From Octopus sinensis (taxonomy: Eukaryota): 43,156 nt of DNA. Positions 9,476 to 42,600 of this stretch are shown in pieces. Both the position numbers and the translations under genes were made by a program. Below the pieces are notes generated by a model, which made no database searches, was not told the DNA's origin, and saw nothing but the letters and a program-made list of their open reading frames with translations. The first letter of the stretch is position 1, and every line of letters begins with the position of its first letter. Location of the stretch: assembly GCF_006345805.1 (NCBI RefSeq), contig NW_021834998.1:1-43156 (forward strand). The letters are read 5' to 3'.

Positions 9476-9588
9476 AATGAATGAATGAATGAATTTTTAT
9501 TAACGGAAAAGCCGAAAAAAGAGGGAGAAAGTTAATGAGACAACGTATGCCTCTTCTTCGTTGTTTCCCTCTTTTTTTTTTTTTTTTT

Positions 9589-12178
9589 TTAATATTTAAT
9601 TCGAGAAGAAAAGGCTCTCTCAAGAACACTTCCAACCGTTTCCGTCGCGTCTTCCATCACTTGAGGGATGGGTTGGTCCAACTGGAGTCCATTTGCCAAT
9701 TTGATGGCATATCGCCTCGTCTTTTCGAGCTTAGCGATAATGCCATCCCTTTCAGCAGTAGGATACCATCCCTCGAACCCGTAGGTAAGCAATGGTTCGA
9801 CGCACGTTTTATAAACATATAAAAACGTTTCCGGGGAAGGTGGAAGTGAATTATGCTCCTGAGAATTTGAGCGCATTTCCTTCTCCTCGAGTCGATGTAT
9901 CTGAAGTAAGAACCCTTGGATCCAACTTCAACCCCAAGGTATTTCAGGTTCTCCGTTACTGTAAACCCATAGAGGTTTCTCGGCGGTTTTCGTTTTGCTC
10001 CCTGTTTTGCAATCCAAGTGGCGGTGCACTTTTCTTTTGCAAGCGTCAGTCCTTTTGATATGCACCATTCTTCCACTCTTGTCACGTATCCTTTTAACTT
10101 CCTCCACGAGATGTTTCTTTTCTCCACGAAGCATCCGTTATTAATATGTCGTCCGCGTAGATCATGAGACGACTGGTAGGATCTTTCGGTTTTGGAATCA
10201 TCAGCAACGTAAATATTAAAAAGCAGGGGGCTCAAGACCGAGCCTTGAGGTACCCCTCTTTTGAGATCGACAGATTCCGACAAACGGTTTCCGCATCGTA
10301 TGTATGACCTTCTCATTGATAAATAGCTCTTCAGCCAATTGACCGTTTTAGACCCGGGTTTGCTCTTGGCGACACTTTCCAAGAGGCCCAGGTGCCATAC
10401 GCTGTCAAAAGCTTTTGAGACATCGAGGCAGATAGCAATAGTCGCTGTATTATTAGCAAGACTAAGCGAGATGACTTTCTCGAGTTCTCCGAAACAATCA
10501 CCACAGGATCTTTTTCGTCGGAATCCCCACTGCTCTACTGCAAGTGCACCTGATTCCTCTACGAAGTTCGAAAGTCTTGTGAAGACAATCCGTTCCATAA
10601 TTTTAGAGACGGAGCATATTAGGCTTATCGGCCTATAGTTCTCTGCATGGTCCTTTATTTTTCCAGGCTTTGGAATCATACGTACGATTGACTTTTTCCA
10701 AGAGTCCGGTACGTATCCAAGTCTCCAGCTTGCATTGTATAGTGCGGTCAAGTATCGTAGGAGAATATTTGGAGCATGTTTGAATACAGAAATTGGAATG
10801 TAGTCATGGCCGGGTGCATTATTCTTGCAGCTCATAATTGCGGCATACGTTTCTTCCAACGTTATGTCTCTGCACAGTGGTCCCGTATGACTCAAATTAG
10901 CTCTTAGACTTCTCTGAGCCTCACATATAACTTCTTTCGGAACCATGTCGATCGGATCCACCTCTTGAACTTTTGCCAGTTGACTTCGCAGATGTGAGGG
11001 AACTTCATCGAGCGGGATATCTATTCCTTCAGTTGTTTTTAGTCGGATCTCTTCTCCTTTGTTCTCCATATTACTCAGTCTGTTGAAAACCTTCCAAAAA
11101 TGAGGGTTTTTCTTATTCAGTTTCGAGCATTGACTCTTCCAAGCAAGGTCTGAATGTTTTTTTGCGACATCATTTATCTCTATTTTCACGGTACGAATCT
11201 TATCCGAAGACGAATACGATCTATGGGGTCACTGCATCGTCTTAGCTTCTTTTCAAGGTTTCCCTTCCATTTTATAAGTTTTCCCAAAGATTCGTCAATC
11301 CGGGTTTTTCTGTTAGTATTTGACATGATGTATTTCCTGATTGAAGATTTTCGGAGAAAGTCCAGTATAGCTTCTCTGAGAATTTTATCAAGTTTTTCAA
11401 TTTGTATATTCGAAGAGATGTTTTGTATTGGATACGGTGTCAAATGCTTTTTCATTGATACCTCAAGGTCCGACCAGATTGTCCGAGACGTATCGTATCC
11501 GATAAACAGATCTTCGCATATCGTAGATGATGTTCGCATACACAAGGATTGAGGTAGGTGATCACTACCAATGTTTATCTCAATCCTTGGTATGCTGCAT
11601 TGATGAACAAGATCTGCCGATACGAGGAAAACTCCAATACAATCCTCTCCATAACAAGAGAAGTGGTTTGGTTCTCGTGAGGTCAAAACACTAAAACCGC
11701 AGTTCTCCGATAATCTGAGGAGTATATTACCGTCCGAATTTGTGTTGGCACATCCGTACGATGTGTGTTTTGCGTTAAGGTCTCCTATTAGAATTCCTCT
11801 ATCATTGTTCTGGAAAAATTCTTCAATAAGATTTTGATAATTCTTCATTGCTTTGGAGTACATAGCTCCGACAGATATCCATCCAAGGGATGTTAGTAGT
11901 TTCAATGTAATCAGTTCGCACAAATTTTGTTCGACGATTTTCAAGTCCCTCACCATCAGATTGTCTTTATAATATATGGATGTCCCAGTGCCAGCCACTG
12001 CGTCAGGTCGCCATGGGATATCAATCGACTGAAAACCATGGATTTTATGATGCTGATTTCCCTTAAGCTTCGTTTCATTAACAACCAATATGTCCATGTT
12101 TACCGAGCTAACCAAGTAGGTTAGCTCCGTAGCCCGTTTCCGAATTGACCGGGCGTTGATAAGCGTAAAAACGCTCAT
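9589..12178 (-). CDS. LINE ORF2: apurinic endonuclease plus reverse transcriptase, broken by a few indels
   Basis: APE motifs LINARSI, VVNETKL, ILIGDLNAKH and GSDHLP. RT motifs PGHDYI, YRPISLICSVSKIMERI, LDVSKAFDSVWH, GVPQGSVLSPLLFNIYVADD and YLGV. Confidence 0.92.
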
Positions 12179-12440
12179 CTCGTCAAGTTTTGGTGACTGT
12201 CCTCCATAACGAGCGCCACCAGTTCCAGTAAATTTTTAAACGTTTTTTTAGTCGTCGTTTTCGATTTAAGATGGAGGTCCTCCAGTTTTGCTTTTAAATG
12301 TTCAATTGCATTTGTCTTTTATCTGCCACCTGTATGTTGCATGGTGGTTGTCCCGGGTTTGATTTGGAAGTGTCCCCGAGTTTCATGCCTCTTTTTGGGT
12401 TGAGTCATATATTCGGTTGTGTTTACGCCTTGTTCCAACT

Positions 12441-13556
12441 TTAATTTTGTTTTTGCGTAGATATAGTGGGTGTCGCAGTTTTCAAAGTGTTTGACATGGA
12501 TTCAGAGATATCGTCAGTCTGAACCTCAGCATCCACGAATTTTGTACTTTTATTAAAGTTCCATCCTTTCCAGGTATTTTGTACTTTCACGTTTCCTGTT
12601 TCAGTTTTGATCGTTTTTCCTTGTATTTTCATTGCGGGAGATGTATCAAATTTCAGTTTAGTAGACTGATCTGTAGTTTTCCGAGGTAATCTCTTTTTAA
12701 GAAGCTCCTTGACAACAGGACATCCTCCATAGTTGGCCATGTGTGTTGAGGATCCACAGTTTATGCACTTGGTAGGGTAGTTTCCAGTCAGAGGACATTC
12801 CGAACGGGTATGTGGGCCCTCACAAATGAGACATCTCACTTTTTCTTTACAGAACCGTGAGATATGTCCGAAACGCTGGCAGCGGAAACATTGCGTGTCT
12901 GGTTGCTTGTACCAACTACAGAAAATTTCGCGGAAACCAATTTTCAACCCCATTCGTATGAGAGAGGCTGCTTCACCCCTAGAGGGGATGGTCACTTTAG
13001 CCAGAGGAAGTGGACTTCCATTTCGGAAAAATCTCTCAACCAAAAACCCCGGAGAGATTAGTTTACCCAGATACTTTACAAGTTCCTCGGTTCCAACCCA
13101 GTTCGGGAGGTTCCTAAGCATTATCGCGGACGCACGTGGCTTTGCCTCCTCGATTTTGTGGCCATTTGGTCCAAAGGGCTGGGTATACTTACAGTAGTCA
13201 ACAAAGGCCGAAAGATCCTCTTTACTTTTGAAATCCAAAACGTAGTCGCCCGAGTGACGACGTGTCACTCGAGCCTTACAAGCGATTTCACAACCACAAA
13301 GTGTGTTTGCTATCTCAATAGAATCGAGCTCTGAGTTGTGTATTGATAGTACAATACTCAGGCATACAGATGGCACGGAGGCCGGGATAGATGGCACGGA
13401 GGCCGGGATAGATGGCACGGAGGCCGAGATAGATGGTACAGAGGTCGAGATAGAAGGCACAGAGGCCGAAATAGAGCGCACAGAAGCCGAGATTGATGGC
13501 ACAGAAGCCTGGATATTCGGGGATTTAAAATTCTTCTTGGATTTTGAATAATTCAT
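12441..13556 (-). CDS. LINE ORF1 nucleic-acid-binding protein with three CCHC knuckles
   Basis: CFRCQRFGHISRFC, CLICEGPHTRSEC and CINCGSSTHMANYGGC, plus an N-terminal 7-aa repeat (ASVPSI[S/P]). Confidence 0.88.
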   Translation of the reverse strand: MNYSKSKKNFKSPNIQASVPSISASVRSISASVPSISTSVPSISASVPSIPASVPSIPASVPSVCLSIVLSIHNSELDSIEIANTLCGCEIACKARVTRRHSGDYVLDFKSKEDLSAFVDYCKYTQPFGPNGHKIEEAKPRASAIMLRNLPNWVGTEELVKYLGKLISPGFLVERFFRNGSPLPLAKVTIPSRGEAASLIRMGLKIGFREIFCSWYKQPDTQCFRCQRFGHISRFCKEKVRCLICEGPHTRSECPLTGNYPTKCINCGSSTHMANYGGCPVVKELLKKRLPRKTTDQSTKLKFDTSPAMKIQGKTIKTETGNVKVQNTWKGWNFNKSTKFVDAEVQTDDISESMSNTLKTATPTISTQKQN

Positions 13557-13627
13557 TGTGAAATTGTTATTAGTATTTTTCTTTTATTTTGCTCACAAGA
13601 ACACCACGTCACAAACACCTAGAGAAC

Positions 13628-13864: not shown

Positions 13865-15022
13865 TTAATTCAAAGATTGAATTATGTCATAAAATACAGG
13901 AGAAAGCACTTTTCTGGAACTAGACTGATCTTCTTGTCTAAAAACAAGACAAGTGGGGAATTTCATCGACAGACCAAGATTGATTCGACTACAAAGACGG
14001 TCAACGAACTGCAAAATAAACATCACCACCCTTTCCTCATTCATACGCATCAAACAACTGTGGTGTACGACTATTCCTCGTTCGAAGCCTGAGTCATCCA
14101 AAACCAAGTCAGAATTATTAAAAAGTCCAAATTGTTGCTTTTTGAATAATTCTCAATCTCCTGATCCAATTCCGGAACCATTCTAATCAACTCCTAGCTA
14201 ATATAAATGAAAGCCAACATCGAGTTTGAGGGGGACTGATGCAATTTGTGTTGAAGGACGGTTCGGGTTTGGCTGAATTTCCTTCATGTCTTTCCTGAGT
14301 ATTTGTTCGAAAGTTAAATCTAATAAGTATTTTGATTACTTGACAGGTCGCTCCTAGCAGACCATAATTCTCGGGATATGAGATGCCTCTCCTTCGGATC
14401 CCTACCAAGCAGATCTTCAGAGTATTAATCATCTCCAGATCTCTAGGAGTACCCTTAGAACACGTTTTATGGTCAGTGAATGCGCAATCAAGCAAGATTG
14501 TGTCTAAATTAGCTGACAAGACCAACCATATAACAACTGGGCTAAAATTGTGTCGAATGGTGTCAGAGTGAGCACTTTTTCGGCTACCAATGTCGAACAG
14601 GACCCCACTTTATGAATGAAAACGTGGTCGGGGATTAGACTGAGTGAAGACTCGTCGGTGATTTGGTGATGGTCGACTACTGAAAATAAACATCCAGAAA
14701 GTCGTTTTGAGAATCCGACGGGAAAATTGTGGTCTACCAAAGACAACCTTGTGAATTGAGGATTTGTGGAGAAAGGGAAATTCAAGTCATCAAAGCACAC
14801 CAACAGAGAGTCGTGTATGCCCATTTTGCGGAATAAATACACCACTTCTGTTTTCGTCGGTAATTCTTTACGGTGAGTATTACAAACAGGAATGCAGGTC
14901 CATTCTGGAAAAGCGAAATGGTAGTAGTAGGCCAATCCTATTGCGGACACGACAGAATCCAAATCGCATGATTCATTCCCGACAATGAAATGGACGTGGT
15001 CGGGAATTGAGGATTTGATCAA
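13865..15022 (-). CDS. PRUNE1: Exopolyphosphatase PRUNE (DHH family)
   Basis: GNESCDLDSVVSA, LVDHN, VVDHH, VGSCSTLVAE, TILLDC, EQILRKDMKE and SRKVLSPV motifs; 20-23 nt introns. Confidence 0.88.
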
Positions 15023-15980: not shown

Positions 15981-16683
15981 TTAAACAAAATAAATCTTTT
16001 ATATTGTTGCGAATACTAATTCGAATAATGTCAGCTCTTTGTTTTGTTTTGAATGGCCATGTTCTGAAATTGTTAATTTTAGAAATAAATGACATTTTCT
16101 AAATAGATAATTTCACATAAGAATTATTAATTGATTTCAAGTATTGTAAGAGATTAGGTAGACAGTTTTGCGTATATTCATTCATTCGAGGATTGGTTGT
16201 CAGGCTACTTTCAAAGTAAGTATCTAAATTAAGTATGGACATAATTTACATGCAGAAATAAAATGGATTATGTTAGTGTTTGTTTACTTAGCTATGAACA
16301 GGACGGAAGAGTCAGAACAGATTTTAGGTTTTGAAATTCTGACTTTTAACGTATTTGAGACTCTTGCTGTAAATGTAGCAAAATGACTTATCAGTCTGGT
16401 ATTTATTGTAAACATTAAGTTTTAACAGAAATTGTATCTTTTCTGTCTACGAGCAGATTATATTTTCTTGAATATGCCATTAAGTGAATTTTATTTTATC
16501 AGTAATATTTTGAAAAATTTTCCGAACTATTTGATTGCTAAACAGAAAATTCAGGTCTAAAAAATTAAATCTACAGGATTGCTATAGAACAATACTGTTT
16601 GATAAAAACACATGGCCGGAAAAAATGTTTTCACCACAGGCCTGGATAACGGTGGGCGAAACGTTGAGGGACCAGAGTTAAAA

Positions 16684-16756
16684 CGACCATGGTGGGACTC
16701 GAACCCAGAATCTCCCGATCCGTAGTCGGGTGCATTATCCATTGCGCCACACGGCC
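16684..16756 (-). tRNA. tRNA-Arg (anticodon ACG), 73 nt
   Basis: GGCCGTGTGGCGCAATGGATAATGCACCCGACTACGGATCGGGAGATTCTGGGTTCGAGTCCCACCATGGTCG: paired acceptor stem, A and B boxes, TTTT terminator downstream. Confidence 0.96.
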
Positions 16757-16881
16757 GGTTTTCCGTCTAATGATACCTTATTAAATATTTTTAAATTATT
16801 TGGCATTTCATGAATTACTGTGTTAATTCTACAAATTCTTTAATATCAATTTATACATGATATTAAATTAATTAAGATCGA

Positions 16882-17816
16882 TTAATCGAAGGAAAGGCCA
16901 GCAGCCTGGCGGATTGCCAAACTGTTTCCCCGGATAACGGCGATCGAGAACAGTTGCATTAGCCACTCCACCTCCCGAGGATCGTGAGTGCGCATTGAGA
17001 TTTTTGCTCCAAGCTTGCGGAGGAACTTTTCAGTCTTTGAACCAAGAGCACCCGACGTCTCCGCCGCTATCAGCACCACGGAAAACTTCTCCGAAAGGAC
17101 AGAATATTTGGATAGCTTTAAATCTTCAGCCTTCTTAGAAGCAGATTTAGCCTCCAGAGCACATGAAATTAAATGTGAAGTAGAAAAAGTGTCCCAGCAG
17201 GTTGCATCCGATACGAGACCTTTTCCGCCTTCAAAAAGGAAAAGGGTCATCCCGTCAGGACGTATGATGTCATTCATAGCAAAGTGCCTCGGAAAACGTC
17301 CGGCATTCCTCCTGCACAATAAAGAATGCAGACCAAAAGAGTCAACAGTGCAGTCACAACGACAAACGTGAGAGACATATTGCCTTACCCCGAGAGAGAT
17401 TCCGATCCTTATTAATTCATCGTTGAGGAGAGTCCGTTCGGGAATGCACAAAGCCAAGCTCAACTAGCTGGGGATGCTGCCGAAAGAAGGCAAGCGCGGC
17501 GGTGCTGGTTGGACTACTCGAGCAGCAGATTGAAAGTTTGCTTGCATCTAATTCGATTCCAGGCTCGTTGAGACATTCGATTTTCTGGAAAGTCAAGACC
17601 TTGTTCCCTCCAGACTTCGCTGAAATGCGTCACATTTGTGTCCAAGGAAAATTCAGAAAAAGAGCGTAGAATTTCCATGACAAGTGTGTGGCTCGATTTT
17701 TCATCAGCCCGAAAGACACCAACCGGTTCCAGGATAGACGGGAATCCCGCGGAATTAAAAGCACTTCTAATCACTTTATTCTTATAAATTTTTGAATCTC
17801 TTACAATGTAGGTCAC
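16882..17816 (-). mobile_element. CRE-like RLE retrotransposon C-terminal region, rearranged
   Basis: HVCRCDCTVDSFGLHSLLC..RHFAMNDII|RPDGMTLF..DATCWDT..KLSKY..IAAETSG..SIAVIRGN. The segment SAGFPSILEPVG is displaced to about 17700-17780. Confidence 0.85.
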
Positions 17817-18285
17817 TCTTTTCTTCGAAGAATGAATTTTTGTAAATCAATTAACATTCCACAGACACTTGGTTTTAAGAAAGACATTAGAGAGCATAAA
17901 ATATCTCATTTTAAATTAAACGAAAAATGCAGTGAATGACGGCAAGATTTTATAATTTCAAGAAACGTGATAATTCGAAAAGGGCAAATAATGAGAAATC
18001 GTTTAAAAGAACAAACTTGTCTAAACTCGAGCAGAAGTGCATAATCGAGGAAATATAATTAATTGTTTGATTTTTACTGTTCGATATTTTAATAATATTC
18101 TTGCAATACACGTTGATTTTGATGTCACGTTGAACAAAAAATTAAATTTTAAATCAATTTGTTGGACAATTTACATGCCCATCTTTACTCTCGAATATAT
18201 TTGGCCACATCCTGTAAACAATCAACCAACTTTGATCGAATTTGTGACCATTTCCATAACCGAATGTCAAAAAATTTCACTACAG

Positions 18286-18965
18286 GGGCGACATTACTCC
18301 CAAGTATACTACTCAGAGGACTGTCCTTACAGGGGAGACATTACTCCCAAGTATACTACTCAGAGGACTGTCCTTACAGGGGGGACATTACTCCCAAGTA
18401 TACTACTCAGAGGACTGTCCTTACAGGGGGGACATTACTCCCGAGTATACTACTCAGAGGACTGTCCTTACGGGGGGACATTACTCCCAAGTATACTACT
18501 CAGAGGACTGTCCTTACAGGGGGACATTACTCCCAAGTATACTACTCAGAGGACTGTCCTTACAGTGGGGACATTACTCCCAACTATACTACTCAGAGGA
18601 CTGTCCTTACAGGGGGGACATTACTCCCAAGTATACTACTCAGAGGACTGTCCTTACAGGGGAGACATTACTCCCAACTATACTACTCAGAGGACTGTCC
18701 TTACAGGGGGGACATTACTCCCAAGTAAACTACTCAGAGGACTGTTTTTACAGGGGAGACATTACTCCCAAGTATACTACTCAGAGGACTGTCCTTACAG
18801 GGGGGACATTACTCCCAAGTATACTACTCAGAGGACTGTCCTTACAGGGGGGACATTACTGCCAAGTATACTACTCAGAGGACTGTCGTTACAGGGGGGA
18901 CATTACTCCCAAGTATACTACTCAGAGGACTGTCCTCACAGGGGGGACATTACTCCCAAGTATAC
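18286..18965 (+). repeat. 47-bp tandem array, block 1 (15 units)
   Basis: Unit GGGGGACATTACTCCCAA-GTATACTACTCAGAGGACTGTCCTTACAG, head-to-tail with no spacers. Confidence 0.97.
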
Positions 18966-18974
18966 TAATAATTT

Positions 18975-19728
18975 TTTGATTTTTTGGCGGAAAGGTTTTA
19001 AGGACCTCATCATGTAAGTCGAGGACGTCGTAGTTGTTCATTTTAACCAAAATGCAAAAAAATTTTTTTAATTTTTTTTTGGAGGAAGGTTTTAAGGACC
19101 TTATCATGTAAGTCGAGGACATCGTAGTTGTTCATTTTAACCAAAATGCAGAAAATTTTTTTTTAATTTTTTTTGAGGGGAGGGTTTTAAGGACCTCATC
19201 ATGTAAGTCGAGGACATCGTAGTTGTTCATTTTAACCAAAATGAAGAAAATTTCTTTTTAATTTTTTATTGAAGGGAAAGTTTTAAGGACCTCATCATGT
19301 AAGTCGAGGACATCGTAGTTGTTCATTTTAACCAAAATGCAGAAAATTTTTTTAATTTTTTTTTGAGGGGAGGGTTTTAAGGACCTCATCATGTAAGTCA
19401 AGGACATTGTAGTTGTTCATTTTAACCAAAATGCAGAAAATTTTTTTTTAATTTTTTTGCGGGGAGGTTTTAAGGACCTCATCATGAATGTCGAGGACAT
19501 CGTAGTTGTTCATTTTAACCAAAATGCAGAAAATTTTTTTAATTTTTTTTGGGGGAAGGTTTTAAGGACCTCATCATGTAAGTCGAGGACATCGTAGTTG
19601 TTCATTTTAACCAAAATACAGAAAAAATTTTTTTAATTTTTTTTGGGGGAAGGTTTTAAGGTTTTCATCATGTAAGTCGAGGACATCGTAGTTGTTCATT
19701 TTAACCAAAATGCATAAAATTTTTTTTT
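18975..19728. repeat. About 95-bp tandem array (8 units)
   Basis: The core GGTTTTAAGGACCTCATCATGTAAGTCGAGGACATCGTAGTTGTTCATTTTAACCAAAATGCAG plus T-runs recurs at about 19001, 19095, 19190, 19286, 19380, 19473, 19565 and 19659. Confidence 0.95.
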
Positions 19729-20796
19729 ATTGGGGTCAGTAGGTTAAAAGCATATTGGGGTCAGTAGGTCAGTAGGTGAAGTTGGGGTAAGTAGGTTAAA
19801 ACCATATTGGGGTCAGTAGGTCAGTAGGTGAAGTTGGTGTCAGTAGGTTAAAACCATATTGGGGTCAGTAGGTCAGTAGGTGAAGTTGGGGTCAGTAGGT
19901 TAAAACCATATTGGGGTCAGTAGGTCAGTAGGTGAAGTTGGTGTCAGTAGGTTAAAACCATATTGGGGTCAGTAGGTCAGTAGGTGAAGTTGGTGTCAGT
20001 AGGTTAAAACCATATTGGAGTCAGTAGGTGAAGTTTGTTTCAGTAGGTTAAAACCATATTGGGGTCAGTAGGTCAGTAGGTGAAGTTTGTTTCAGTAGGT
20101 TAAAACCATATTGGGGTCAGTAGGTCAGTATTTGAAGTAGGTGTCAGTAGGTTAAAAACATATTGGGGTCAGTAGGTCACTAGGTGAAGTAGGTGTCAGT
20201 AGGTTAAAAACATATTGGGGTCAGTAGGTCAGTAGGTGAAGTTGGTGTCAGTAGGTAAAAGGCATATTGGGGTCAGTAGGTTAAAAGCATATTGGGGTCA
20301 GTAGGTCAGTAGGTGAAGTTGGTGTCAGTAGGTTAAAACCATATTGGGGTCAGTAGGTCAGTAGGTGAAGTTGGGGTCAGTAGGTTAAAAGCATATTGGG
20401 GTCAGTAGGTCAGTAGGTGAAGTTGGTGTCAGTAGGTTAAAAGCATATAGGGGTCAGTAGGTCAGTAGGTGAAGTTGGTGTCAGTAGGTTAAAACCATAT
20501 TGGGGTCAGTAGGTCAGTAGGTGAAGTTGGGGTCAGTAGGTTAAAAGCATATTGGAGTCAGTAGGTCAGTAGGTGAAGTTGGTGTCAGTAGGTTAAAACC
20601 ATATTGGGGTCAGTAGGTCAGTAGGTGAAGTTGGGGTCAGTAGGTTAAAAGCATATTGGGGTCAGTAGGTCAGTAGGTGAAGTTGGTGTCAGTAGGTTAA
20701 AACCATATTGGGGTCAGTAGGTCAGTAGGTGAAGTTGGGGTCAGTAGGTTAAAACATATTGGGGTCAGTAGGTCAGTAGGTGAAGTTGAGGTTCAG
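19729..20796. repeat. About 52-bp tandem array (about 20 units) with an internal GTCAGTAG sub-repeat
   Basis: Unit GTTAAAACCATATTGGGGTCAGTAG-GTCAGTAG-GTGAAGTTGGTGTCAGTAG. Confidence 0.95.
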
Positions 20797-22974
20797 CTCC
20801 CAAGTATACTACTCAAAGGACTGTCCTTACAGGGGGGACATTACTCCCAAGTATACTACTCAAAGGACTGTCCTTACAGGGGAGACATTACTCCCAAGTA
20901 TACTACTCAGAGGACTGTCGTTACAGGGGGGACATTACTCCCAAGTATACTACTCAGAGGACTGTCCTTACAGGGGGGACATTACTCCCAAGTATACTAC
21001 TCAGAGGACTGTCCTTACAGTGGGGACATTACTCCCAAGTATACTACTCAGAGGACTGTCCTTACAGGGGGGACATTACTCCCAAGTATACTACTCAGAG
21101 GACTGTCCTTACAGTGGGGACATTACTCCCAAGTATACTACTCAGAGGACTGTCCTTACAGGGGGGACATTACTGCCAAGTATACTACTCAGAGGACTGT
21201 CCTTACAGGGGGGACATTACTGCCAAGTAAACTACTCAGAGGACTGTCCTTACAGGGGGGACATTACTCCCAAGCATACTACTCAGAGGTCTGTCCTTAC
21301 AGGGTGGACATTACTCCCAAGTATACTACTCAAAGGACTGTCCTTACAGGGGAGACATTACTCCCAAGTAAACTACTCAGAGGACTGTCTTTACAGGGGA
21401 GACATTACTCCCAAGTATACTACTTAAAGGACTGTCCTTACAGGGGGACATTACTCCCAAGTATACTACTCAGAGGACTGTCCTTACAGGGGGGACATTA
21501 CTGCCAAGTAAACTACTCAGAGGACTGTCCTTACAGGGGGGACATTACTGCCAAGTAAACTACTCAGAGGACTGTCCTTACAGGGGGGACATTACTCCCA
21601 AGCATACTACTCAGAGGTCTGTCCTTACAGGGTGGACATTACTCCCAAGTAAACTACTCAGAGGACTGTCTTTACAGGGGAGACATTACTCCCAAGTATA
21701 CTACTTAAAGGACTGTCCTTACAGGGGGGACATTACTCCCAAGTATACTACTCAGAGGACTGTCCTTACAGGGGGACATTACTGCCAAGTAAACTACTCA
21801 GAGGACTGTCCTTACAGGGGGACATTACTCCCAAGTATACTACTTAAAGGACTGTCCTTACAGGGGGACATTACTGCCAAGTAAACTACTCAGAGGACTG
21901 TCCTTACAGGGGGGACATTACTGCCAAGTAAACTACTCAGAGGACTGTCCTTACAGGGGGGACATTACTCCCAAGCATACTACTCAGAGGTCTGTCCTTA
22001 CAGGGGAGACATTACTCCCAAGTAAACTACTCAGAGGACTGTCTTTACAGGGGAGACATTACTCCCAAGTATACTACTTAAAGGACTGTCCTTACAGGGG
22101 GGACATTACTCCCAAGTATACTACTCAGAGGACTGTCCTTACAGGGGGGACATTACTGCCAAGTATACTACTCAGAGGACTGTCCTTACAGGGGGGACAT
22201 TACTGCCAAGTAAACTACTCAGAGGACTGTCCTTACAGGGGGGACATTACTCCCAAGCATACTACTCAGAGGGTCTGTCCTTACAGGTGGACATTACTCC
22301 CAAGTATACTACTCAAAGGACTGTCCTTACAGGGGAGACATTACTCCCAAGTAAACTACTCAGAGGACTGTCTTTACAGGGGAGACATTACTCCCAAGTA
22401 TACTACTTAAAGGACTGTCCTTACAGGGGGGACATTACTCCCAAGTATACTACTCAGAGGACTGTCCTTACAGGGGGGACATTACTCCCAAGTATACTAC
22501 TTAAAGGACTGTCCTTACAGGGGGGACATTAGTCCCAAGTATACTACTCAGAGGACTGTCCTTACAGGGGGGACATTACTCCCAAGTATACTACTCAGAG
22601 GACTGTCCTTACAGTGGGGACATTACTCCCAAGTATACTACTCAGAGGACTGTCTTTACAGGGGGGACATTACTGCCAAGTATACTACTCAGAGGACTGT
22701 CCTTACAGGGGGGACATTACTGCCAAGTAAACTACTCAGAGGACTGTCCTTACAGGGGGGACATTACTCCCAAGCATACTACTCAGAGGACTGTCCTTAC
22801 AGGGTGGACATTACTCCCAAGTATACTACTCAAAGGACTGTCCTTACAGGGGAGACATTACTCCCAAGTAAACTACTCAGAGGACTGTCTTTACAGGGGA
22901 GACATTACTCCCAAGTATACTACTCAGAGGACTGTCCTTACAGGGGAGACATTACTCCCAAGTATACCACTCAG
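20797..22974 (+). repeat. 47-bp tandem array, block 2 (about 46 units) with higher-order variant order
   Basis: Same unit and orientation as block 1; recurring ordered variants. Confidence 0.97.
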
Positions 22975-24661: not shown

Positions 24662-27137
24662 ATGGTTATTATCTAGATTAATAGATAGACTATACTCCTT
24701 CTATTCCTCTCACTGTCCACGGCAACGGACCTCTCTGTCTACGAAGAAACACCCGTGGGGACATTCATTGGCAACTACTGTCTTCTCTCAAAGATTTCAT
24801 GCAGATCGTACAACTCCCTCAGTTTCGACAAAAACATGTTATCTATTGACTTATCGGGGGATATTAAGGTTGTCATTTCTGAAGACTCACTGCTTAGGTG
24901 ACACAGAGAATTGACTCCGATAGCATCCCGGGAAGAATCATCAACATCAACCTCACTCTCAAAAAAGTCTCATTGGCGACTATCTACGATATTATTAAAC
25001 TGAAGGTCATTGACATTAACGACAATCCCCCAAAATTCCCGAGCTGGCGGACTATTATGCTTCCCTCAATTTCCCAGGATTTATTCTCCACTTACCTAAG
25101 GCTGAGGACAGAGACTTGGGGATCAACGCCATTCAACGGTATGAGCTGTTGGGAAAAGGACCTTTCTCACTCACGGAAAATAGGTCGTCCCCAGTCCTCA
25201 TATCTCACTCAGCCAACGCTCAAAAGTCGGTCAAACTGCGACTATTGGTATTTGACGATCAAAAAATCGTTTTTTGGTCATTTATGGACGTTTTTATCAC
25301 CTTTGGCGACTCCTACAAAGCCACTACTCAGTTCTACGACGTGGTCTTCAGTCACTCGGCCAATAAAGGGACCCCACTACTCAATGTAGGGCCCACTAAG
25401 GACTACATACAGCACGTGTACAAATTAGAGGGGAACAAATACTCTATTGACACATATGGAACAATAATAAAGAATGATGATGAAAAAATAATCAAAGACC
25501 AGCTAAATGTGTTAGTGGATAACACAAGAGGGCAAATTACGTCCTATCAAGTGCAGATTGAGACTGTTGAACGAAAAAACTTGTCATTAAAATGGACTAA
25601 TCAGAAAAGCAAGATTTTCAACGTGCTAAGGAACACTTCCTTTATTGCTCAGTTGTGTGTAAGCTGTCATGAAAATGATTTAAACGTGGAATGCAAAACC
25701 AATACAAAAAGTGTCGTTCTGGTAAGAGTTAAAAGCAACGTGTTTAATCTAACTCTCGTGGATTATTCAAATGTCATTCCCAAAATATTTGTGTACGTGT
25801 ATTGCACGTGGGTTGAGAATATCACAAGATATAGTACATGGTACCCACATGAGGAAACGTCGAAAGACATTGTTCAAGTTTGAATTATTTTATTCAAATA
25901 GATATTTCCCAAAGATGACCAAGTACCTCAATTATTGGGAATTTATGAAGACATGCCTTTAGACACCGTTGCCTTGTTGGGAGTGGATAATGCGTTTGAA
26001 ATAGAATTAAATGACTACTTTAATTGCCATCAAGTGTTTCGCAAAGACAATAAAGTTGGGTGCTTCGAAGTCGGCTCGCGGAAAATTTTCGACAGGGAAA
26101 AACTGGACAACCTCACTATAGGTTTTCTCTTTTGGAACGAAACGATCAATCCTTTGACAATCAGAATACTGGACTTGAATGAATATCCCCCCGTCTTCAG
26201 AAATAAAAACTGTGCCATTTCGATCAAGTTGGATACTCCGTCGGGACTTGAGTTGGCGAGAGTGTTGGCAGAAGATGAGGACATAGGACCCGACAGGGAG
26301 ATATGGTATAGAATGATGTCTGTGGAGAATATGAGTGATTACAGCAATAGCCACGGCATGTTCTCCATTGATTTGAGTACTGGAAGACTGAGAACAAGCA
26401 AAAAAATAAACAGGACGGGGTATTTCCTCGTGAACCTCCGAGCTTCTGACTCAGGACCCCAGAATTTGTTTGCGGATTTACACTGTCTCGTCCAAGTCGT
26501 TGATCTTTCTTCCGTTTTTGTGTATTCCTACAAAGGAAGTGTACTGGGACTATCCTCGACCATCGAATCGTCGAACATTCAAGTGGGAGATGTTTTCCTA
26601 CAAAATTCACGTTTCACATATGACTTCACTTTTTTTGTCGTTAATGACACGAATGGACATTTCCGATGTGACCCCGATTCTGGGAATGTGACTTTGGTTA
26701 AGCAAATGTCTCCCGGCGACTATTTGAAGTTGACCATCAAAGCTGTTTTCCGTCCCAATCCTTCCTTGTGGACGCTGTACTCCGTAGATTTGTTCTTACG
26801 GAATCCAATAGTGAGCGGATTGAGTGCCACTTTCGTGTCAGTTCCTGTCGTAGTTCTAATAATTTGTGTCGGGTTTGTGTGCTTGGGAGTCTATCTGTAT
26901 CGAAAGCACAGATCACCTCGAAAAATAGAGGTGAAATTTACATCTACCCTATAGCGACACACCGAGTAATTATAACTAATTATTTTTGTTATGTATAATT
27001 TATGGATTTGTAGTCCGATTATAACAGCGGTATTTGCAGGTGAGAATATCCAAAGTCGTGCTGAAAAATTGCAGGACTTTGACACATCAATCATTAATGT
27101 TGCCACTTCAAGTGTTAGTGTTAATTCTCGCTTCTAA
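24662..27137 (+). CDS. Protocadherin-like cadherin-repeat membrane protein (about 6-7 EC repeats, TM, short tail)
   Basis: Signal-like MTILLLFLSLSTA after a mini-intron, then VYEETPVGTFIGN, DINDNPPKF, AEDRDLGINAIQRYEL, DLNEYPPVF, AEDEDIG, ASDSG and TM VPVVVLIICVGFVCLGVYLY. The 3' exons are approximate. Confidence 0.82.
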
Positions 27138-28364: not shown

Positions 28365-28850
28365 ACATCTCAGGACCGCTTAAAACAAGTGGAAGTTGAA
28401 AACTTCACAAATATGATTTCCTTGCAAATGAACTGTCACTACTCTACGAATGCCAAGTTAAAATTATTCCCGTGGTTCTGACCTGGGATGGTGTTGTCAC
28501 AAGATGCTTCAAAAATTATATGGATAAACTATATATTGAAAAATCTACAATGACATACATCCAATCGGTTGTGCTCAAAAGGACGCTAGAGAGCATGATA
28601 ATTGAACACAAGCATGGAATGATGATAACTGGCGAGGAATATACTTCTGCGACCGATCAACTAGTAGAAATGGCATGCCGCCAGGACATTCCATTCAAAG
28701 ATAAAAGACGCACAACAACTGACGCAGAGATAGAGAATGAAGAGGAACAGCAGCAGACTCTTCTCCTAAAAGGAGAGAGAGACTACCAATCAGGATTGAA
28801 AGTCCTAATTAAATATTTTAATCTAAATTAAATTTGGTTTCGTAAATAAA
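28365..28850 (+). mobile_element. 5'-truncated copy of the RLE retroelement (endonuclease C-terminus plus 3' UTR)
   Basis: QDRLKQVEVE..KYDFLANELSL..KVKIIPVVLTWDGVVTRCFKNYMDKL..YIQSVVLKRTLES, close to 32220-32460; ends with the same AATAAATG. Confidence 0.88.
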
Positions 28851-32100: not shown

Positions 32101-32718
32101 GAAATCAGAGTCGATATGTCAATCATGACGGAAACTAAAGTTCAATCCAACAAACCAGATATCTTCGTGTATGACAAAACCAAACAAGAGATAACCTTAA
32201 TTGAAGTTGGCATCACGTCACAAGATCGCCTCAAACAAGTCGAAATCGAGAAATTTCGTAAATATGATCTGCTCGCAAACGAACTTTCGATACTTTATGA
32301 TGCAAAGGTAAAGATTATCCCGGTTGTCTTGACCTGGGACGGTGTTGTTTCGAGATATTTCAAAAACTATACGGACAAATTATCGATCGAAAAAGCCACA
32401 AGAACTTATATTCAATCTGTCGTTTTAAAAAGGACTCTAGAAAGCATGGTAGTTGAACACAGACATGGAGTGAGAGTATCTGCCGAAGAATACGCCTCTG
32501 CTGCTTACCAGCTTGCAGAAGTGGCATGCTGCCGTGACACGCCGGGGTGAAAGATGTGAGACAAATAGAAAATCTATCTGACTGGGAGATGGGAGTGAGA
32601 AGGAACTGGTTGCAAGGTCTTCTCCTAAAAGGAGGAGAAAGATTCCAATAAGCGGGACTGAGAATCTAAATTAAATAGTCTAGCTTAAGTTAAATTTTGT
32701 TTCTTTTAATAATAAATG
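29142..32718 (+). mobile_element. Apparently full-length RLE-type non-LTR retrotransposon (R4/Dong-like)
   Basis: RT motifs WKAPG.DGIYNFFIK, LRPITCMS, WIDVKKAFDSVDH, GILQGDSLSP and FIDDLK; CCHC (CSHC..DHL..C..YLRRHNEV); RLE NKPDIFVYD..LIEVG. 12-bp TSD TCTGATGTCAAA at 29130-29141 and 32719-32730. Confidence 0.9.
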
Positions 32719-39841: not shown

Positions 39842-40943
39842 CTCTGTGAATCTATTGCTATTTTTTATATCAAATTAAAACTTTCGAGAGATCAAATAAT
39901 TCCCAAAATACGGTTCATTTTACTTTTAAGCGAAAATAAAGCTAAAGATTCATTAGAAAAATATACTATCATTATTAGTCACATTATTGTTAAATTTGAA
40001 AAAAGTTCTAAGATTTATTAAAATTAAGTGCATTTTAAAAATTTAATAAAATTTTCAGGCAATGAAAATTTTTGCCGCACCATTCAATATAGATCTTAGG
40101 AATGCTCCCCCATCACTCCAATTAGTTAGTTAGTTAGTTACCACGACTTCTCTAGCTTGTATGAGGCCGGCTGTCATCAGGCGATCAGCAGTGAGTGCTG
40201 GGCTTCGTCCCAAAAAAGTTTAAAGTGAATGGAGTCGGTATCTTGGATGGTCTTTAAGGAGCCTGTAGGCAGGTTTGTTTGGATATTTGTTTCAACTGCA
40301 AAGTGTGTTCTTCTCCCAGAAACGCTGAACTTCGTCCCTAAAAACTTTTTTTGTAAAAATAATTGTTACGCTCTCCTACAAGCAAGGACGCAATTACCAA
40401 AAAAATGTAGTAAAAAACGAAGTTACAACCCGGAAGAGCGCTGCCCCCATCATACTTTATCAAAAAAAAAGTTTTCAAAGATCAAACTCTAACAACGCAA
40501 GCCTTGGAAACGATGGAATCAAATATCTCTTTTAACACATTTAACACATTTTATTGACCAAAGGACAGGGTAAGCCAGTTGATTATAATCCCCCGTGATC
40601 CCCAAATCAAGCGAGGGAGATCCTTCTGAAAGGTTCAATCCTGCTCACAATGATCGGACAGAGACGACGATGTCCCAGGGCAGAGATCTAGAAGTTCTTT
40701 TCGGTAGGCATTAAGTGCCTCCTGAGCGTTGCCATATCCGATGGAATTTCCAACTGACATGGTAGACTCCATAACGCCACGCTAAATCCGGAAGGTAAGA
40801 GATCCCCATTTCCAACTGTGTCGTGCCAAAGTACTCGTTTGCCTCACGGGCAGGGGAACGATAACGAAAATTGACCCAGGATGAAAAACTGCCTCCTTCG
40901 AATCGAACTCACGACTGTCCAAGTCTTCAGCCAAGAGGGCTGA

Positions 40944-41628
40944 AATGTTGAAATGGACTATAACTTTTCTTTTGCAAAAGAAAGTGCATTCCAATCTTCG
41001 ATTTTGATGATGAAAAAACATACGCTGAGTGAGGCCCTGATGAGAGAGTTGAATAGAACGATACGATTTTAGAAGCCACAAAGAAATCTTAGAAGCCGAT
41101 TCTAGTGTCTACTTTATAGGTCAGGGTGCAACAAGTTATAAGTCAGGTAGTTTAGCAGAGCAGTTTGGCAGTGTGCGTGTGATGGATATGCCTCTGTCAG
41201 AAAATCGTTTACTGGGTGTTATTGGAACAGCTTTAATAGGGATACGACCGATTCTTTGTTTCCCACCACGTCAATTTGTTCGTTTCATCCTGTGATCAAC
41301 TCATTAACAACGCCGCGAAATGGAACTAAATTTCTGCTGAACACCTTAAATTTCAACTTGTTATTCGTCTTATTATGGAAAGAGGTTAAGGACAAGAGAC
41401 ACATAATTCCCAATACATGCACAACCTATTTGATATATTCGGAATAAAAATCATCATGCCTGCAACTGCAAGAGTGATGTCAAAGAGATTTTCATGCCGC
41501 TGTTAAGACAATAATCCTGTCATTTTCATGGAACAGTGCAGGCTCCATGAAACGTTTAGTTCGATTCTGGTGAAAATAGCTCTGTTTCTATTGGAAAAAG
41601 ACATCACAGTCATCAATCTTGGAAGATA
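40944..41628 (+). pseudogene. Bacterial-type TPP-dependent 2-oxoacid/acetoin dehydrogenase E1: alpha C-terminus plus N-terminal two-thirds of beta, decayed
   Basis: FSFAKESAF, then MREL..TILEAT..EADSSVYFIGQG..LAEQFGSVRVMDMPLSEN..IGIRPI..DQLINNAAKW..LVIRLIMERG*GQ..HNSQ..GIKIIMPAT..DNNPVIFMEQ..LH..GKDITV. Intronless, with in-frame stops. Confidence 0.85.
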
Positions 41629-41799
41629 ACAGCCCACTATAAATGAAAAATCCACTACCAAAAACTTTTGAAATATGGGATAAAGTATATCTTGGATTGA
41701 AAATTAGTAAAAATGTAAGAAACAATCTTTCCTTCTAAAATCTAGATGTATATATCCAGCTATAAGACTTTGGAAAATATTATTTTCGTCTTTTTTATT

Positions 41800-41915
41800 C
41801 CCGCATGTCTGCTATCACAGGCGACGCCCGCAAATCGAGATGGTTTTTTGAGCGGATATCCCTTGCGATAGTACGCTCTAACTTTTTCTCGATCGCGTCG
41901 GCTTCCCGCCCATGA
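41800..41915 (+). mobile_element. CRE-like extreme 3' fragment
   Basis: ITGDARKSRWFFERISLAIVRSNF..* matches the DPRE..LFQRLSVAIQRGN terminus of CRE elements. Confidence 0.6.
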
Positions 41916-42157
41916 AGCTTTTATTAATTAACTTGTAGTTATTTACTTTGTTCACAATGTCATTCCAATTCTGTAATAGAGGACCAGATTTTAACTAATA
42001 AAATTCAACAGCTCCATTATTGTTAATTAACGAGAGAGACATGGTTAGTAGTGTTAGTATTTTAGTAGTGTTAGTATTTTAGTATTTAAGACATTTAAGG
42101 AGAGAACCTGTCTTGATTCTCTCTGATGGAGAAGTATCCATAAAAGAAGTAAAATTT

Positions 42158-42600
42158 GAAAATGTTTTCATGTCCTTCAATCAATCAAGTGGCTTTAGAG
42201 AGTCGTCTGATTCATTATGTTTTGTGTTTGAAACGGAGAGTTTGCTGTCATCAAATCTAAGGAGAGTAATATCTGGAAACGTTTTCATGTCCTTCAACCA
42301 ATAAGTGGCTTTAGAGAGTCGTCTGATTCATTCATGTTTTGTGTTTGAAACGGAGAGTGCTGTCATCAAAATCTAAGGGAGTAATATCTGGAAACGTTTT
42401 CATGTCCTTCAACCAATCAAGTGGCTTTAGAGAGTCGTCTGATTCATTCATGTTTTGTGTTTGAACGGAGAGTTGCTGTCATCAAAAATCTAAGGGAGTA
42501 ATATCTGGAAACGTTTTCATGTCCTTCAACCAATCAAGTGGCTTTAGAGAGTCGTCTGATTCATTCATGTTTGTGTTTGAAATGGAGAGTTATTGTCATC
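42158..42600 (-). repeat. About 117-bp tandem repeat (about 3.8 copies), open as a 39-aa repeat on the minus strand
   Basis: Copies start at about 42261, 42377 and 42494. The consensus translates to LDFDDSNSPFQTQNMNESDDSLKPLDWLKDMKTFPDITP. Confidence 0.85.

What the first reader, a model, noticed from the sequence alone, without database searches (positions are those of the whole stretch)
40944..41628. Decayed bacterial E1 alpha/beta operon remnant in an animal genome (candidate horizontal transfer)
Seen: an intronless beta subunit with DQLINNAAKW and LVIRLIMERG*GQ..HNSQ, directly preceded by an alpha-like C-terminus (FSFAKESAF). In-frame TAA stops (41387-41389 at a conserved Trp) are substitutions, not homopolymer slips, and the flanks are host transposon relics. 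Established: mitochondrial PDHB has IVFRGPNG..AQHSQ, whereas IRLIIGRGWGQG..HSQ marks a bacterial subfamily often found in polysaccharide or sugar-modification clusters. Adjacent alpha-beta order is an operon trait. Inference: an old integration of bacterial (or giant-virus-borne) DNA, now a pseudogene. Decay argues against live contamination.
Basis: partly seen in the sequence, partly recalled or inferred. Interest (0 to 1): 0.7.

Follow-up and report, generated by a model that had tools for sequence, protein, structure and literature searches.

The report
Dead chlamydial gene fragment in octopus DNA
About 0.9 kb of a two-gene bacterial operon (E1 alpha and beta of a thiamine-dependent enzyme) from a Simkania-like chlamydia sits broken and decaying in what looks like an octopus chromosome, a small molecular fossil of a past germ-line encounter between an intracellular bacterium and a cephalopod.

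Summary
Window 40317-41630 holds about 897 bp of a bacterial E1 alpha/beta operon: alpha residues ~152-321 with its TGA stop, the 7-bp spacer, then beta residues 1-~212. A 417-bp non-bacterial insertion (40532-40948) splits it.

- **Host:** the window is Octopus DNA. A 4.1-kb retrotransposon in it is 99.6% identical to an Octopus sinensis contig.
- **Donor:** a Simkaniaceae chlamydia. The remnant is 85-88% identical in nucleotides to an environmental contig that also carries the chlamydial topoisomerase I-SWIB fusion. The beta remnant is sister to that contig's protein in 200 of 200 bootstraps (75% identity, against 32% to human PDHB and 27-35% to viral relatives).
- **Decay:** it looks neutral. 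Of 92 substitutions, 34/22/36 fall on codon positions 1/2/3. Synonymous changes number 21 against 20.6 expected. GC-to-AT changes outnumber the reverse 57 to 18. There are 32 indels, five stop-creating changes and a ~180-bp internal deletion.

Still untested: read support for the junctions, presence in other octopods, and the class of the insertion. This is a new member of a known kind, dead bacterial DNA in an animal genome.

The parts
40317..40414 (+). E1 alpha remnant, part 1 (about residues 152-192 of the L001 alpha, including the ETLNF...CxNNxYA motif). It carries internal deletions of 3, 11 and 7 bp. About 180 bp of alpha (L001 ~9605-9788) is missing after it.
   Evidence: tblastn alpha residues 153-176; local nucleotide alignment to L001 9482-9604, score 89, against 24 for the upstream flank, which is within shuffled scores (mean 27, maximum 36).
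40415..40531 (+). E1 alpha remnant, part 2 (about residues 254-293).
   Evidence: blastn 87.6% over 121 bp to L001 9789-9907; tblastn residues 257-293.
40532..40948 (.). Non-bacterial insertion of 417 bp splitting alpha. It can also be read as 408 bp plus a 9-bp local duplication (CTGAAATGT|TGAAATGG) at the right junction. GC is 47.5%. The minus strand ends in a TGTGTTAAA-type tail and has a B-box-like GAGTTCGATTCGA. Class unknown; a host SINE-like element is only an inference.
   Evidence: L001 is contiguous across the site, 9907 to 9909. No match to any of 87 bacterial loci. No Rfam or tRNA hit. No second copy in the window or L088.
40949..41032 (+). E1 alpha C-terminus (residues 294-321, EMDYNFSFAKESAF/PIFDFDDEKTYAE) with a 1-bp deletion at 40989, ending in the alpha stop TGA at 41030-41032.
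   Evidence: Nucleotide alignment to L001 9909-9993; tblastn residues 295-321 in two frames.
41040..41630 (+). E1 beta remnant (residues 1 to about 212; the Transket_pyr domain only, the C-terminal Transketolase_C domain is absent). Stop-creating substitutions lie at 41056, 41329, 41388-41389 (Trp TGG to TAA) and 41625. There are many 1-bp indels and deletions of 11 and 20 bp.
   Evidence: blastn 84.6% over 674 bp to L001; lesion list; Pfam and PDB hits of the stitched protein; codon-projected protein has 134 of 212 residues identical to P0001.

Best explanation
This is a dead fragment of bacterial DNA integrated in an octopus nuclear genome.

A piece of about 1.16 kb of a polycistronic alpha-beta operon entered the germ-line genome of an Octopus lineage. 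It ran from the 3' half of E1 alpha through the stop and spacer into the 5' two-thirds of E1 beta. The donor was a Simkaniaceae (Chlamydiota) intracellular bacterium very close to the organism of contig L001.

In the donor, the pair belongs to a TPP-dependent E1-like subfamily that sits in nucleotide-sugar and LPS/O-antigen clusters rather than in a pyruvate dehydrogenase complex. The fragment lacked a promoter, the alpha N-terminus and the beta C-terminal domain, so it was non-functional on arrival.

Since then it has drifted neutrally under the host's AT-biased, deletion-biased mutation. It lost about 260 bp net, gained five stop-creating changes and many frameshifts, and was split by a 417-bp insertion of non-bacterial DNA.

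**Shown:** homology, donor clade, host identity of the surrounding DNA, neutral decay, and the clean insertion.

**Inferred:** the route (DNA from lysed intracellular bacteria captured by end-joining in a germ-line cell). The age is also inferred: JC distance 0.114, which gives tens of millions of years only if a generic invertebrate rate of 2-5e-9 per site per year is assumed.
For: **Homology**
- E 1.9e-60 to P0001. Nucleotide identity of 84.6% over 674 bp and 87.6% over 121 bp to L001.
- Operon stop, spacer and start are preserved.

**Donor**
- L001 carries a topoisomerase I-SWIB fusion that passes the NCBIfam equivalog NF004966 (1349 bits, cut-off 868).
- The nearest GTDB genomes to P0001 are Simkania or Simkaniaceae MAGs at 64-84%.
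- NJ tree: the remnant is sister to P0001 in 200/200 bootstraps, inside the Simkania clade.

**Host**
- Window 9476-13612 is 99.6% identical to O. sinensis GCA_006345805.1 contig VCDQ01013128.1, with different flanks.
- Reverse transcriptase, endonuclease, cadherin and DHH domains occur in the window.
- No other bacterial homology anywhere in the 43 kb.

**Neutral decay**
- Substitutions fall 34/22/36 by codon position, with 21 synonymous against 20.6 expected.
- Functional bacterial orthologues over the same region show 27/22/107, and 79 synonymous to 15 non-synonymous.
- GC-to-AT changes number 57 against 18 the other way. There are 24 deletions and 8 insertions.
- Remnant GC is 36-38%, against 44.6% for the L001 genes and 37% for the window.
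- Assembly indel noise, estimated from two transposon copies, is about 0.3% per bp against 3.7% here.

**Insertion**
- It is clean relative to L001 and non-bacterial.
Against: - There is only one assembly and no reads. Junctions at 40317 and ~41630 could not be checked.
- Junction-spanning ORFs are not on record in other assemblies.
- No orthologous or empty site was available.
- The insertion could not be shown to be a host repeat.
- The indel-to-substitution ratio (0.35) is unusually high.
- The lack of any synonymous excess requires that the L001 lineage barely diverged from the donor. This is compatible with an old transfer only if the bacterial side changed by roughly dS 0.06 or less.
- Host assignment rests on a transposon copy and generic animal domains, not on a single-copy octopus gene.
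Confidence: 0.85

Rival explanations
1. Assembly artefact: reads from a living chlamydial symbiont or contaminant were wrongly joined to octopus DNA, so nothing is integrated.
For: Chlamydia-like and Simkaniaceae bacteria do occur in marine molluscs (PMC7661492, read). The assembly shows some long-read-type indel noise (12 gap openings in 4.1 kb).
Against: - The copy is only about 0.9 kb, truncated at both ends inside genes, and has no other bacterial sequence in 43 kb. Two independent chimeric joins would be needed.
- It carries five stop-creating changes, 32 indels, a ~180-bp deletion and a 417-bp non-bacterial insertion.
- Its substitutions are neutral and AT-biased, unlike those of live orthologues.
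- The indel density is about 12 times the assembly noise.
Confidence: 0.04
2. The fragment is of bacterial origin but reached this locus indirectly. It could have been carried by a giant virus, or captured and moved by a host mobile element, and it may be present in several copies.
For: IMG/VR viral contigs do encode members of this E1 beta subfamily. The window is transposon-rich. The 46%-GC stretch at 40146-40316 and the 417-bp insertion are unexplained foreign-looking DNA next to or inside the remnant. Copy number in the genome was not testable.
Against: - Viral relatives are only 27-35% identical to the remnant, against 64% for L001 on the same measure and 85-88% in nucleotides.
- No transposon terminus, target-site duplication or transposon coding relic adjoins the remnant.
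- There is no second copy in the window or in L088.
Confidence: 0.08
3. It is a decayed copy of the animal's own mitochondrial-type PDHB or BCKDHB gene, such as a processed pseudogene, and not a transfer.
For: It is intronless and belongs to the same superfamily; PDB E1 beta chains match at E 1e-13 to 1e-15.
Against: - It shares 32% identity with human PDHB against 75% with P0001, and human PDHB falls outside the whole subfamily in the tree.
- It has the subfamily motifs INNAAKW and the decayed GRGWGQG.
- An alpha gene with a bacterial stop-spacer-start junction lies directly upstream. A processed eukaryotic mRNA cannot give that arrangement.
Confidence: 0.01

Closest known systems
Nuclear inserts of endosymbiont DNA in animals (Wolbachia 'nuwts' in insects and filarial nematodes; analogous to NUMTs). 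From my own knowledge.
   Same: A fragment of DNA from an obligate intracellular bacterium sits in a host chromosome. It cuts across gene boundaries, has no function, and decays by neutral substitution and deletion. It was later interrupted by other DNA.
   Different: The donor is a Simkaniaceae chlamydia rather than Wolbachia, and the host is a cephalopod mollusc. Only about 0.9 kb is seen. I found no report of chlamydia-to-octopus transfer in the searchable literature.
Heterotetrameric TPP-dependent E1 (alpha2beta2) of pyruvate, acetoin or branched-chain 2-oxoacid dehydrogenases (PDB 3duf, 1w85, 1ni4, 1um9, 1dtw).
   Same: The domains match: E1_dh alpha followed by Transket_pyr(+Transketolase_C) beta, in an adjacent alpha-beta operon. 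P0001 just passes the NCBIfam subfamily model NF006667 (325.8 bits, cut-off 321) and matches PDB E1 beta chains at E 1e-64.
   Different: The donor subfamily has GRGWGQG where PDHB has GPNGASAG. It fails the PDH equivalog cut-offs. It lies with nucleotide-sugar, O-antigen and ABC-2 exporter genes rather than E2/E3 genes. The octopus copy is truncated and dead.
E1-like alpha/beta pairs proposed to add two-carbon branches to keto-sugars in antibiotic sugar pathways (AviB1/AviB2 type). Recalled from memory; a lead only.
   Same: An E1 alpha/beta pair sits among sugar-nucleotide modifying enzymes (epimerase/reductase, methyltransferase, nucleotidyltransferase), as seen around this subfamily.
   Different: No sequence comparison with those proteins was made here. 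The function of the chlamydial pair is untested.

Membership tests
2-oxoacid dehydrogenase E1 beta subunit (Transket_pyr + Transketolase_C) | Significant match to the pyrimidine-binding domain | tested here: met
   The stitched remnant hits PF02779 at E 4.8e-13, 49.6 bits (cut-off 27). PDB E1 beta chains match at E 3e-15.
2-oxoacid dehydrogenase E1 beta subunit (Transket_pyr + Transketolase_C) | Complete open reading frame including the C-terminal Transketolase_C domain | tested here: not met
   Homology ends at beta residue ~212 of 356. Five stop-creating substitutions and more than 20 frameshifting indels are present. It is a pseudogene fragment, not a functional member.
Bacterial E1 alpha/beta subfamily of nucleotide-sugar clusters (INNAAKW + GRGWGQG motifs) | Subfamily motifs and closest relatives within the subfamily | tested here: met
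   The remnant reads DQLINNAAKW and IRLIMERG*GQ, against the invariant W123 and GRGWGQG of alignment A1. The top 120 hits are all proteins of this type.
Bacterial E1 alpha/beta subfamily of nucleotide-sugar clusters (INNAAKW + GRGWGQG motifs) | Alpha gene immediately upstream in operon arrangement | tested here: met
   The alpha C-terminus, the TGA at 41030-41032, a 7-bp spacer and the ATG at 41040 are collinear with L001. Alpha is present next to beta in 78 of 82 loci.
Bacterium-to-animal germ-line DNA insert (nuwt-like LGT) | Closest relatives are bacterial, from an identifiable donor clade, and not host paralogues | tested here: met
   Sister to P0001 in 200/200 bootstraps within the Simkania clade; human PDHB shares 32% identity. 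The chlamydial TopA-SWIB fusion is on the same donor-like contig.
Bacterium-to-animal germ-line DNA insert (nuwt-like LGT) | Physically linked to bona fide host DNA on both sides | tested here: inconclusive
   On this contig the answer is yes: an octopus retrotransposon at 99.6% identity, plus cadherin and DHH exons. Read support for the junctions could not be examined, and junction ORFs are not on record elsewhere.
Bacterium-to-animal germ-line DNA insert (nuwt-like LGT) | Signs of residence in the host: neutral decay toward host composition | tested here: met
   Synonymous changes 21 against 20.6 expected; codon positions 34/22/36; GC-to-AT 57 against 18; GC 36-38% against 44.6% in the donor-like genes. 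Control with live orthologues: 79 synonymous to 15 non-synonymous.
Bacterium-to-animal germ-line DNA insert (nuwt-like LGT) | Present in several individuals or related species at the orthologous site | not testable with these tools
   No octopod assemblies or reads can be searched by DNA here.
tRNA-derived SINE (for the 417-bp insertion) | tRNA-related head with pol III A and B boxes | tested here: not met
   No tRNA or other significant Rfam match at E up to 10, and no ARAGORN hit. By eye there is only a B-box-like GAGTTCGATTCGA with 2 mismatches.
tRNA-derived SINE (for the 417-bp insertion) | Dispersed multi-copy repeat with target-site duplication | tested here: inconclusive
   No flanking duplication; there is only a one-sided 8-9-bp duplication. 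No other copy exists in the 64 kb of octopus DNA at hand, which is too little DNA to decide.
Eukaryotic mitochondrial PDHB/BCKDHB pseudogene | Highest similarity to eukaryotic PDHB or BCKDHB | tested here: not met
   The stitched remnant scores 55 bits against human PDHB, 30 bits against human BCKDHB and 222 bits against P0001. The tree agrees.

The most novel reading that the evidence does not exclude
The remnant may be the visible tip of a long-standing, germ-line-accessing association between octopods and one particular Simkaniaceae lineage that still exists (the organism of contig L001, whose genes differ from the remnant only by the remnant's own neutral decay). If so, further transfers from the same donor, larger or even functional, may lie elsewhere in octopus genomes. 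The unusually indel-rich, AT-biased decay might also reflect accelerated degradation of foreign DNA rather than ordinary drift.
Probability: 0.15. Interest if true: 0.65.

Novelty: new member of a known kind. Interest (0 to 1): 0.45.

Why it matters
Dead bacterial inserts in animal genomes are well known for Wolbachia. They are rarely documented for Chlamydiota, and I found no report for cephalopods.

The remnant is direct genomic evidence that a Simkania-like chlamydia once had access to octopus germ-line nuclei. It also names a near-identical living relative that can be looked for in octopus tissues.

It is also a clean warning for annotation and contamination screens. The sequence would be flagged as bacterial contamination, yet it appears to be host DNA. 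It has no functional consequence by itself.

Tried and rejected
- **Raw six-frame translations of 40001-41900 against Pfam:** 0 hits. The frames are too fragmented, and only the stitched protein scores.
- **Rfam, gathering thresholds on the whole window and E up to 10 on 40450-41000:** only a tRNA-Arg gene far away, and nothing in the insertion.
- **Self-BLAST of the insertion and both flanks, and BLAST against the other octopus locus:** no second copies.
- **Two metagenome scans** (a 23-mer of the insertion and a 25-mer of the 47-bp satellite) to find host DNA in environmental samples: 0 hits.
- **Exact-protein look-ups** of the window's 371-aa ORF1, two junction-spanning ORFs and an ORF inside the insertion, to find independent assemblies: none on record.
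- **Sample metadata for the L001 contigs from the literature:** the two papers found give no habitat.
- **Host from a prune-like/cadherin query:** only 34-39% hits to spiders and a tick, which was misleading. The retrotransposon query settled on Octopus.
- **Further donor genes in the window** (blastn and tblastx with L001, L003, L004 and L008; flanks against all 87 bacterial loci): nothing outside 40317-41630.
- **Giant-virus origin:** rejected as the best source.
- **Host PDHB pseudogene:** rejected.

Full report
**1. The observation**

Raw frames give no Pfam hit. A protein stitched across the frameshifts gives three results:
- It hits Transket_pyr (PF02779) at E 4.8e-13.
- It matches solved E1 beta chains at E 3e-15 to 1e-13.
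- In the 5.8-billion-protein search its best hit is P0001, at E 1.9e-60 and 63% identity. The next hits are P0002 and P0003 at 53%.

The feature is real.

**2. Anatomy**

P0001 is encoded on three near-identical environmental contigs (L001-L003) directly downstream of a 321-aa E1 alpha gene.

| Window | Matches in L001 | Identity |
|---|---|---|
| 40317-40414 | 9482-9604, with several deletions | about 69% by blastn over 105 aligned bp, 23 of them gaps |
| 40415-40531 | 9789-9907 | 87.6% |
| 40949-41594 | 9909-10578 | 84.6% over 674 bp |

- About 180 bp of alpha (L001 ~9605-9788) is missing between the first two blocks.
- Homology upstream of 40317 is no better than in shuffled sequence.
- Homology ends at about 41630, which is beta residue ~212 of 356.
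- The alpha stop (TGA, 41030-41032), the 7-bp spacer and the beta ATG (41040-41042) are collinear with L001.
- L001 is contiguous from 9907 to 9909 where the window has 417 extra bases (40532-40948). This is a clean insertion, with only an 8-9-bp one-sided duplication at its right edge.
- Nothing else in the 43 kb matches L001, L003, L004 or L008 by blastn or tblastx.

**3. The host**

- The window has three reverse-transcriptase-bearing elements, an endonuclease ORF, a cadherin exon and a DHH (prune-like) exon. It also has a tRNA-Arg gene and large 47-, 52- and 94-bp satellite arrays.
- The EN+RT protein of the element at 9.5-13.6 kb is 98% identical to an Octopus sinensis protein.
- Window 9476-13612 is 99.6% identical to contig VCDQ01013128.1 of assembly GCA_006345805.1, with unrelated flanks. 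That is a paralogous copy of a young transposon.
- The window is therefore DNA of Octopus sinensis or a very close relative.

**4. The donor**

- L001 carries a topoisomerase I-SWIB fusion that passes NCBIfam equivalog NF004966 (1349 bits). To my knowledge this fusion is a chlamydial hallmark.
- In one genome per GTDB species, the nearest relatives of P0001 are Simkania sp. OZ244056 (84%), another Simkania MAG (71%) and other Simkaniaceae and Chlamydiota (59-67%). Only then come unrelated phyla.
- I projected the window bases onto L001's codons to get a 212-residue pseudo-protein with X at gaps and stops. It shares:
  - 75% identity with P0001,
  - 59-62% with the Simkania OZ244056 / P0002 / P0003 group,
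  - 32% with human PDHB,
  - 28% with Geobacillus PDH E1 beta.
- In an NJ tree on 180 columns it is sister to P0001 in 200/200 bootstraps, on a long branch, while P0001's own branch is very short.
- Viral contigs encode subfamily members, but these share only 27-35% identity with the remnant.
- Simkaniaceae sequences have been reported from marine molluscs (bivalves) (PMC7661492). I found nothing for octopus.

**5. What the genes do in the donor**

- P0001 and P0002 lie among Wzy_C, GT1/GT4 and GT2 glycosyltransferase genes and an ABC-2 exporter pair.
- Across 82 loci of the subfamily, the commonest neighbours are:
  - the alpha gene (78 loci),
  - RmlD-type epimerase/reductases (61),
  - a cytidylyltransferase-PfkB kinase fusion (46),
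  - a conserved 196-aa protein with no family (39),
  - methyltransferases (36),
  - short-chain and zinc dehydrogenases,
  - an acetolactate-synthase-like TPP enzyme.
- P0001 just passes a generic PDH-beta subfamily model but fails the equivalogs.
The chemistry, possibly two-carbon transfer to a keto-sugar, is my inference only.

**6. Decay**

Over 874 aligned bases there are 92 substitutions. Over the 867 aligned coding sites, p = 0.106 and the JC distance is 0.114.

| Measure | Remnant vs L001 | Neutral expectation | Live orthologues (L001 vs L008 / L004) |
|---|---|---|---|
| Codon positions 1/2/3 | 34/22/36 | 33/30/28 | 27/22/107 and 28/20/109 |
| Synonymous : non-synonymous | 21 : 71 | 20.6 synonymous | 79:15 and 86:13 |

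- Essentially all the divergence is unconstrained. The donor was therefore almost identical to the L001 organism. A Poisson bound leaves room for a bacterial-side dS of roughly 0.06 at most.
- Changes are AT-biased: GC-to-AT 57 against AT-to-GC 18. C>T plus G>A account for 45 of 92, and only 7 of those are at CpG.
- Remnant GC (36-38%) has moved from the donor-like 44.6% to the window's 37%.
- There are 32 indels (24 deletions, 8 insertions; 22 of 1 bp, about half in homopolymers). Stop-creating changes lie at 41056, 41329, 41388/41389 and 41625.
- Two copies of the young transposon differ by 5 mismatches and 12 gap openings in 4141 bp. Assembly indel noise is thus about 0.3% per bp, roughly 12 times too low to explain the remnant's 3.7%.

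**7. Interpretation**

The simplest account is a dead-on-arrival insertion of chlamydial DNA into an octopus germ-line chromosome. Neutral decay followed, and so did a later insertion of other DNA.

- A chimeric assembly of live symbiont reads would need two false joins around a 0.9-kb, heavily mutated, internally deleted and interrupted fragment.
- A host PDHB pseudogene is excluded by the tree and by the operon junction.
- A viral or transposon vector cannot be excluded but has no positive support.
- An age in the tens of millions of years follows only if one assumes a generic 2-5e-9 substitutions per site per year. This is an assumption, not a measurement.

**8. What remains open**

- The class of the 417-bp insertion is unknown. 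It has a SINE-like tail and a B-box-like motif. It has no tRNA match, no target-site duplication and no second copy.
- The 46%-GC stretch at 40146-40316 is unexplained.
- The indel-to-substitution ratio is high.
- Read support, copy number and phylogenetic distribution in octopods were not testable.
- No step had to be referred.

Noticed in passing
window 9476-13612 (-): An apparently young non-LTR retrotransposon. It has an ORF1 of 371 aa with zinc knuckles and an internal 21-bp tandem repeat at 13368-13509, an endonuclease ORF of 330 aa, and an RT ORF of 510 aa. It is 99.6% identical to a copy on another O. sinensis contig, so the family was probably recently active.
   Followed up: partly
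window 18281-22974: A composite satellite block. Arrays of a 47-bp unit (18281-18967 and 20797-22974, about 60 copies) bracket 94/285-bp and 52-bp arrays, with GC skew up to +0.45. Translated, they give long spurious ORFs (18037-19017, 20780-21427).
   Followed up: no
window 16683-16757 (-): An intact-looking tRNA-Arg(ACG) gene (Rfam 45.6 bits; ARAGORN) beside an unclassified 193-aa ORF (16882-17463).
   Followed up: no
window 14504-15022 (-) and 25116-26954 (+): Likely host exons: a DHH/prune-like exopolyphosphatase exon (best named hits are spiders and a tick at 34-39%) and cadherin-domain exons ending in a transmembrane-like segment.
   Followed up: partly
window 28472-28831 and 32116-32550 (+): Two ORFs share a long near-identical peptide (VLTWDGVV.R.FKNY.DKL.IEK.T.TYIQSVVLKRTLESM). 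They are presumably two copies of the 3' part of the RT-bearing element at 30.2-31.5 kb or a relative.
   Followed up: no
window 42148-42600: A 117-bp tandem repeat, 3.9 copies at 94% identity, about 0.5 kb downstream of the remnant. Unclassified.
   Followed up: no
window 40146-40316: A 46%-GC stretch directly 5' of the bacterial remnant; the flank further out is 29% GC. It follows a (TTAG)n microsatellite and matches none of the fetched bacterial loci. It might be further foreign DNA or a host repeat.
   Followed up: partly
L001 8441-9031, L004 8462-9061 (bacterial loci): A conserved 196-199-aa protein with no Pfam or NCBIfam match overlaps the start of E1 alpha (apparent translational coupling). 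It accompanies the pair in 39 of 82 loci and may be an uncharacterised third subunit or partner of this sugar-cluster E1 subfamily.
   Followed up: partly
L088 against window 9476-13612: Two copies of the same octopus retrotransposon differ by more gap openings (12) than mismatches (5). This suggests residual long-read indel errors of about 0.3% per bp in one or both assemblies.
   Followed up: partly
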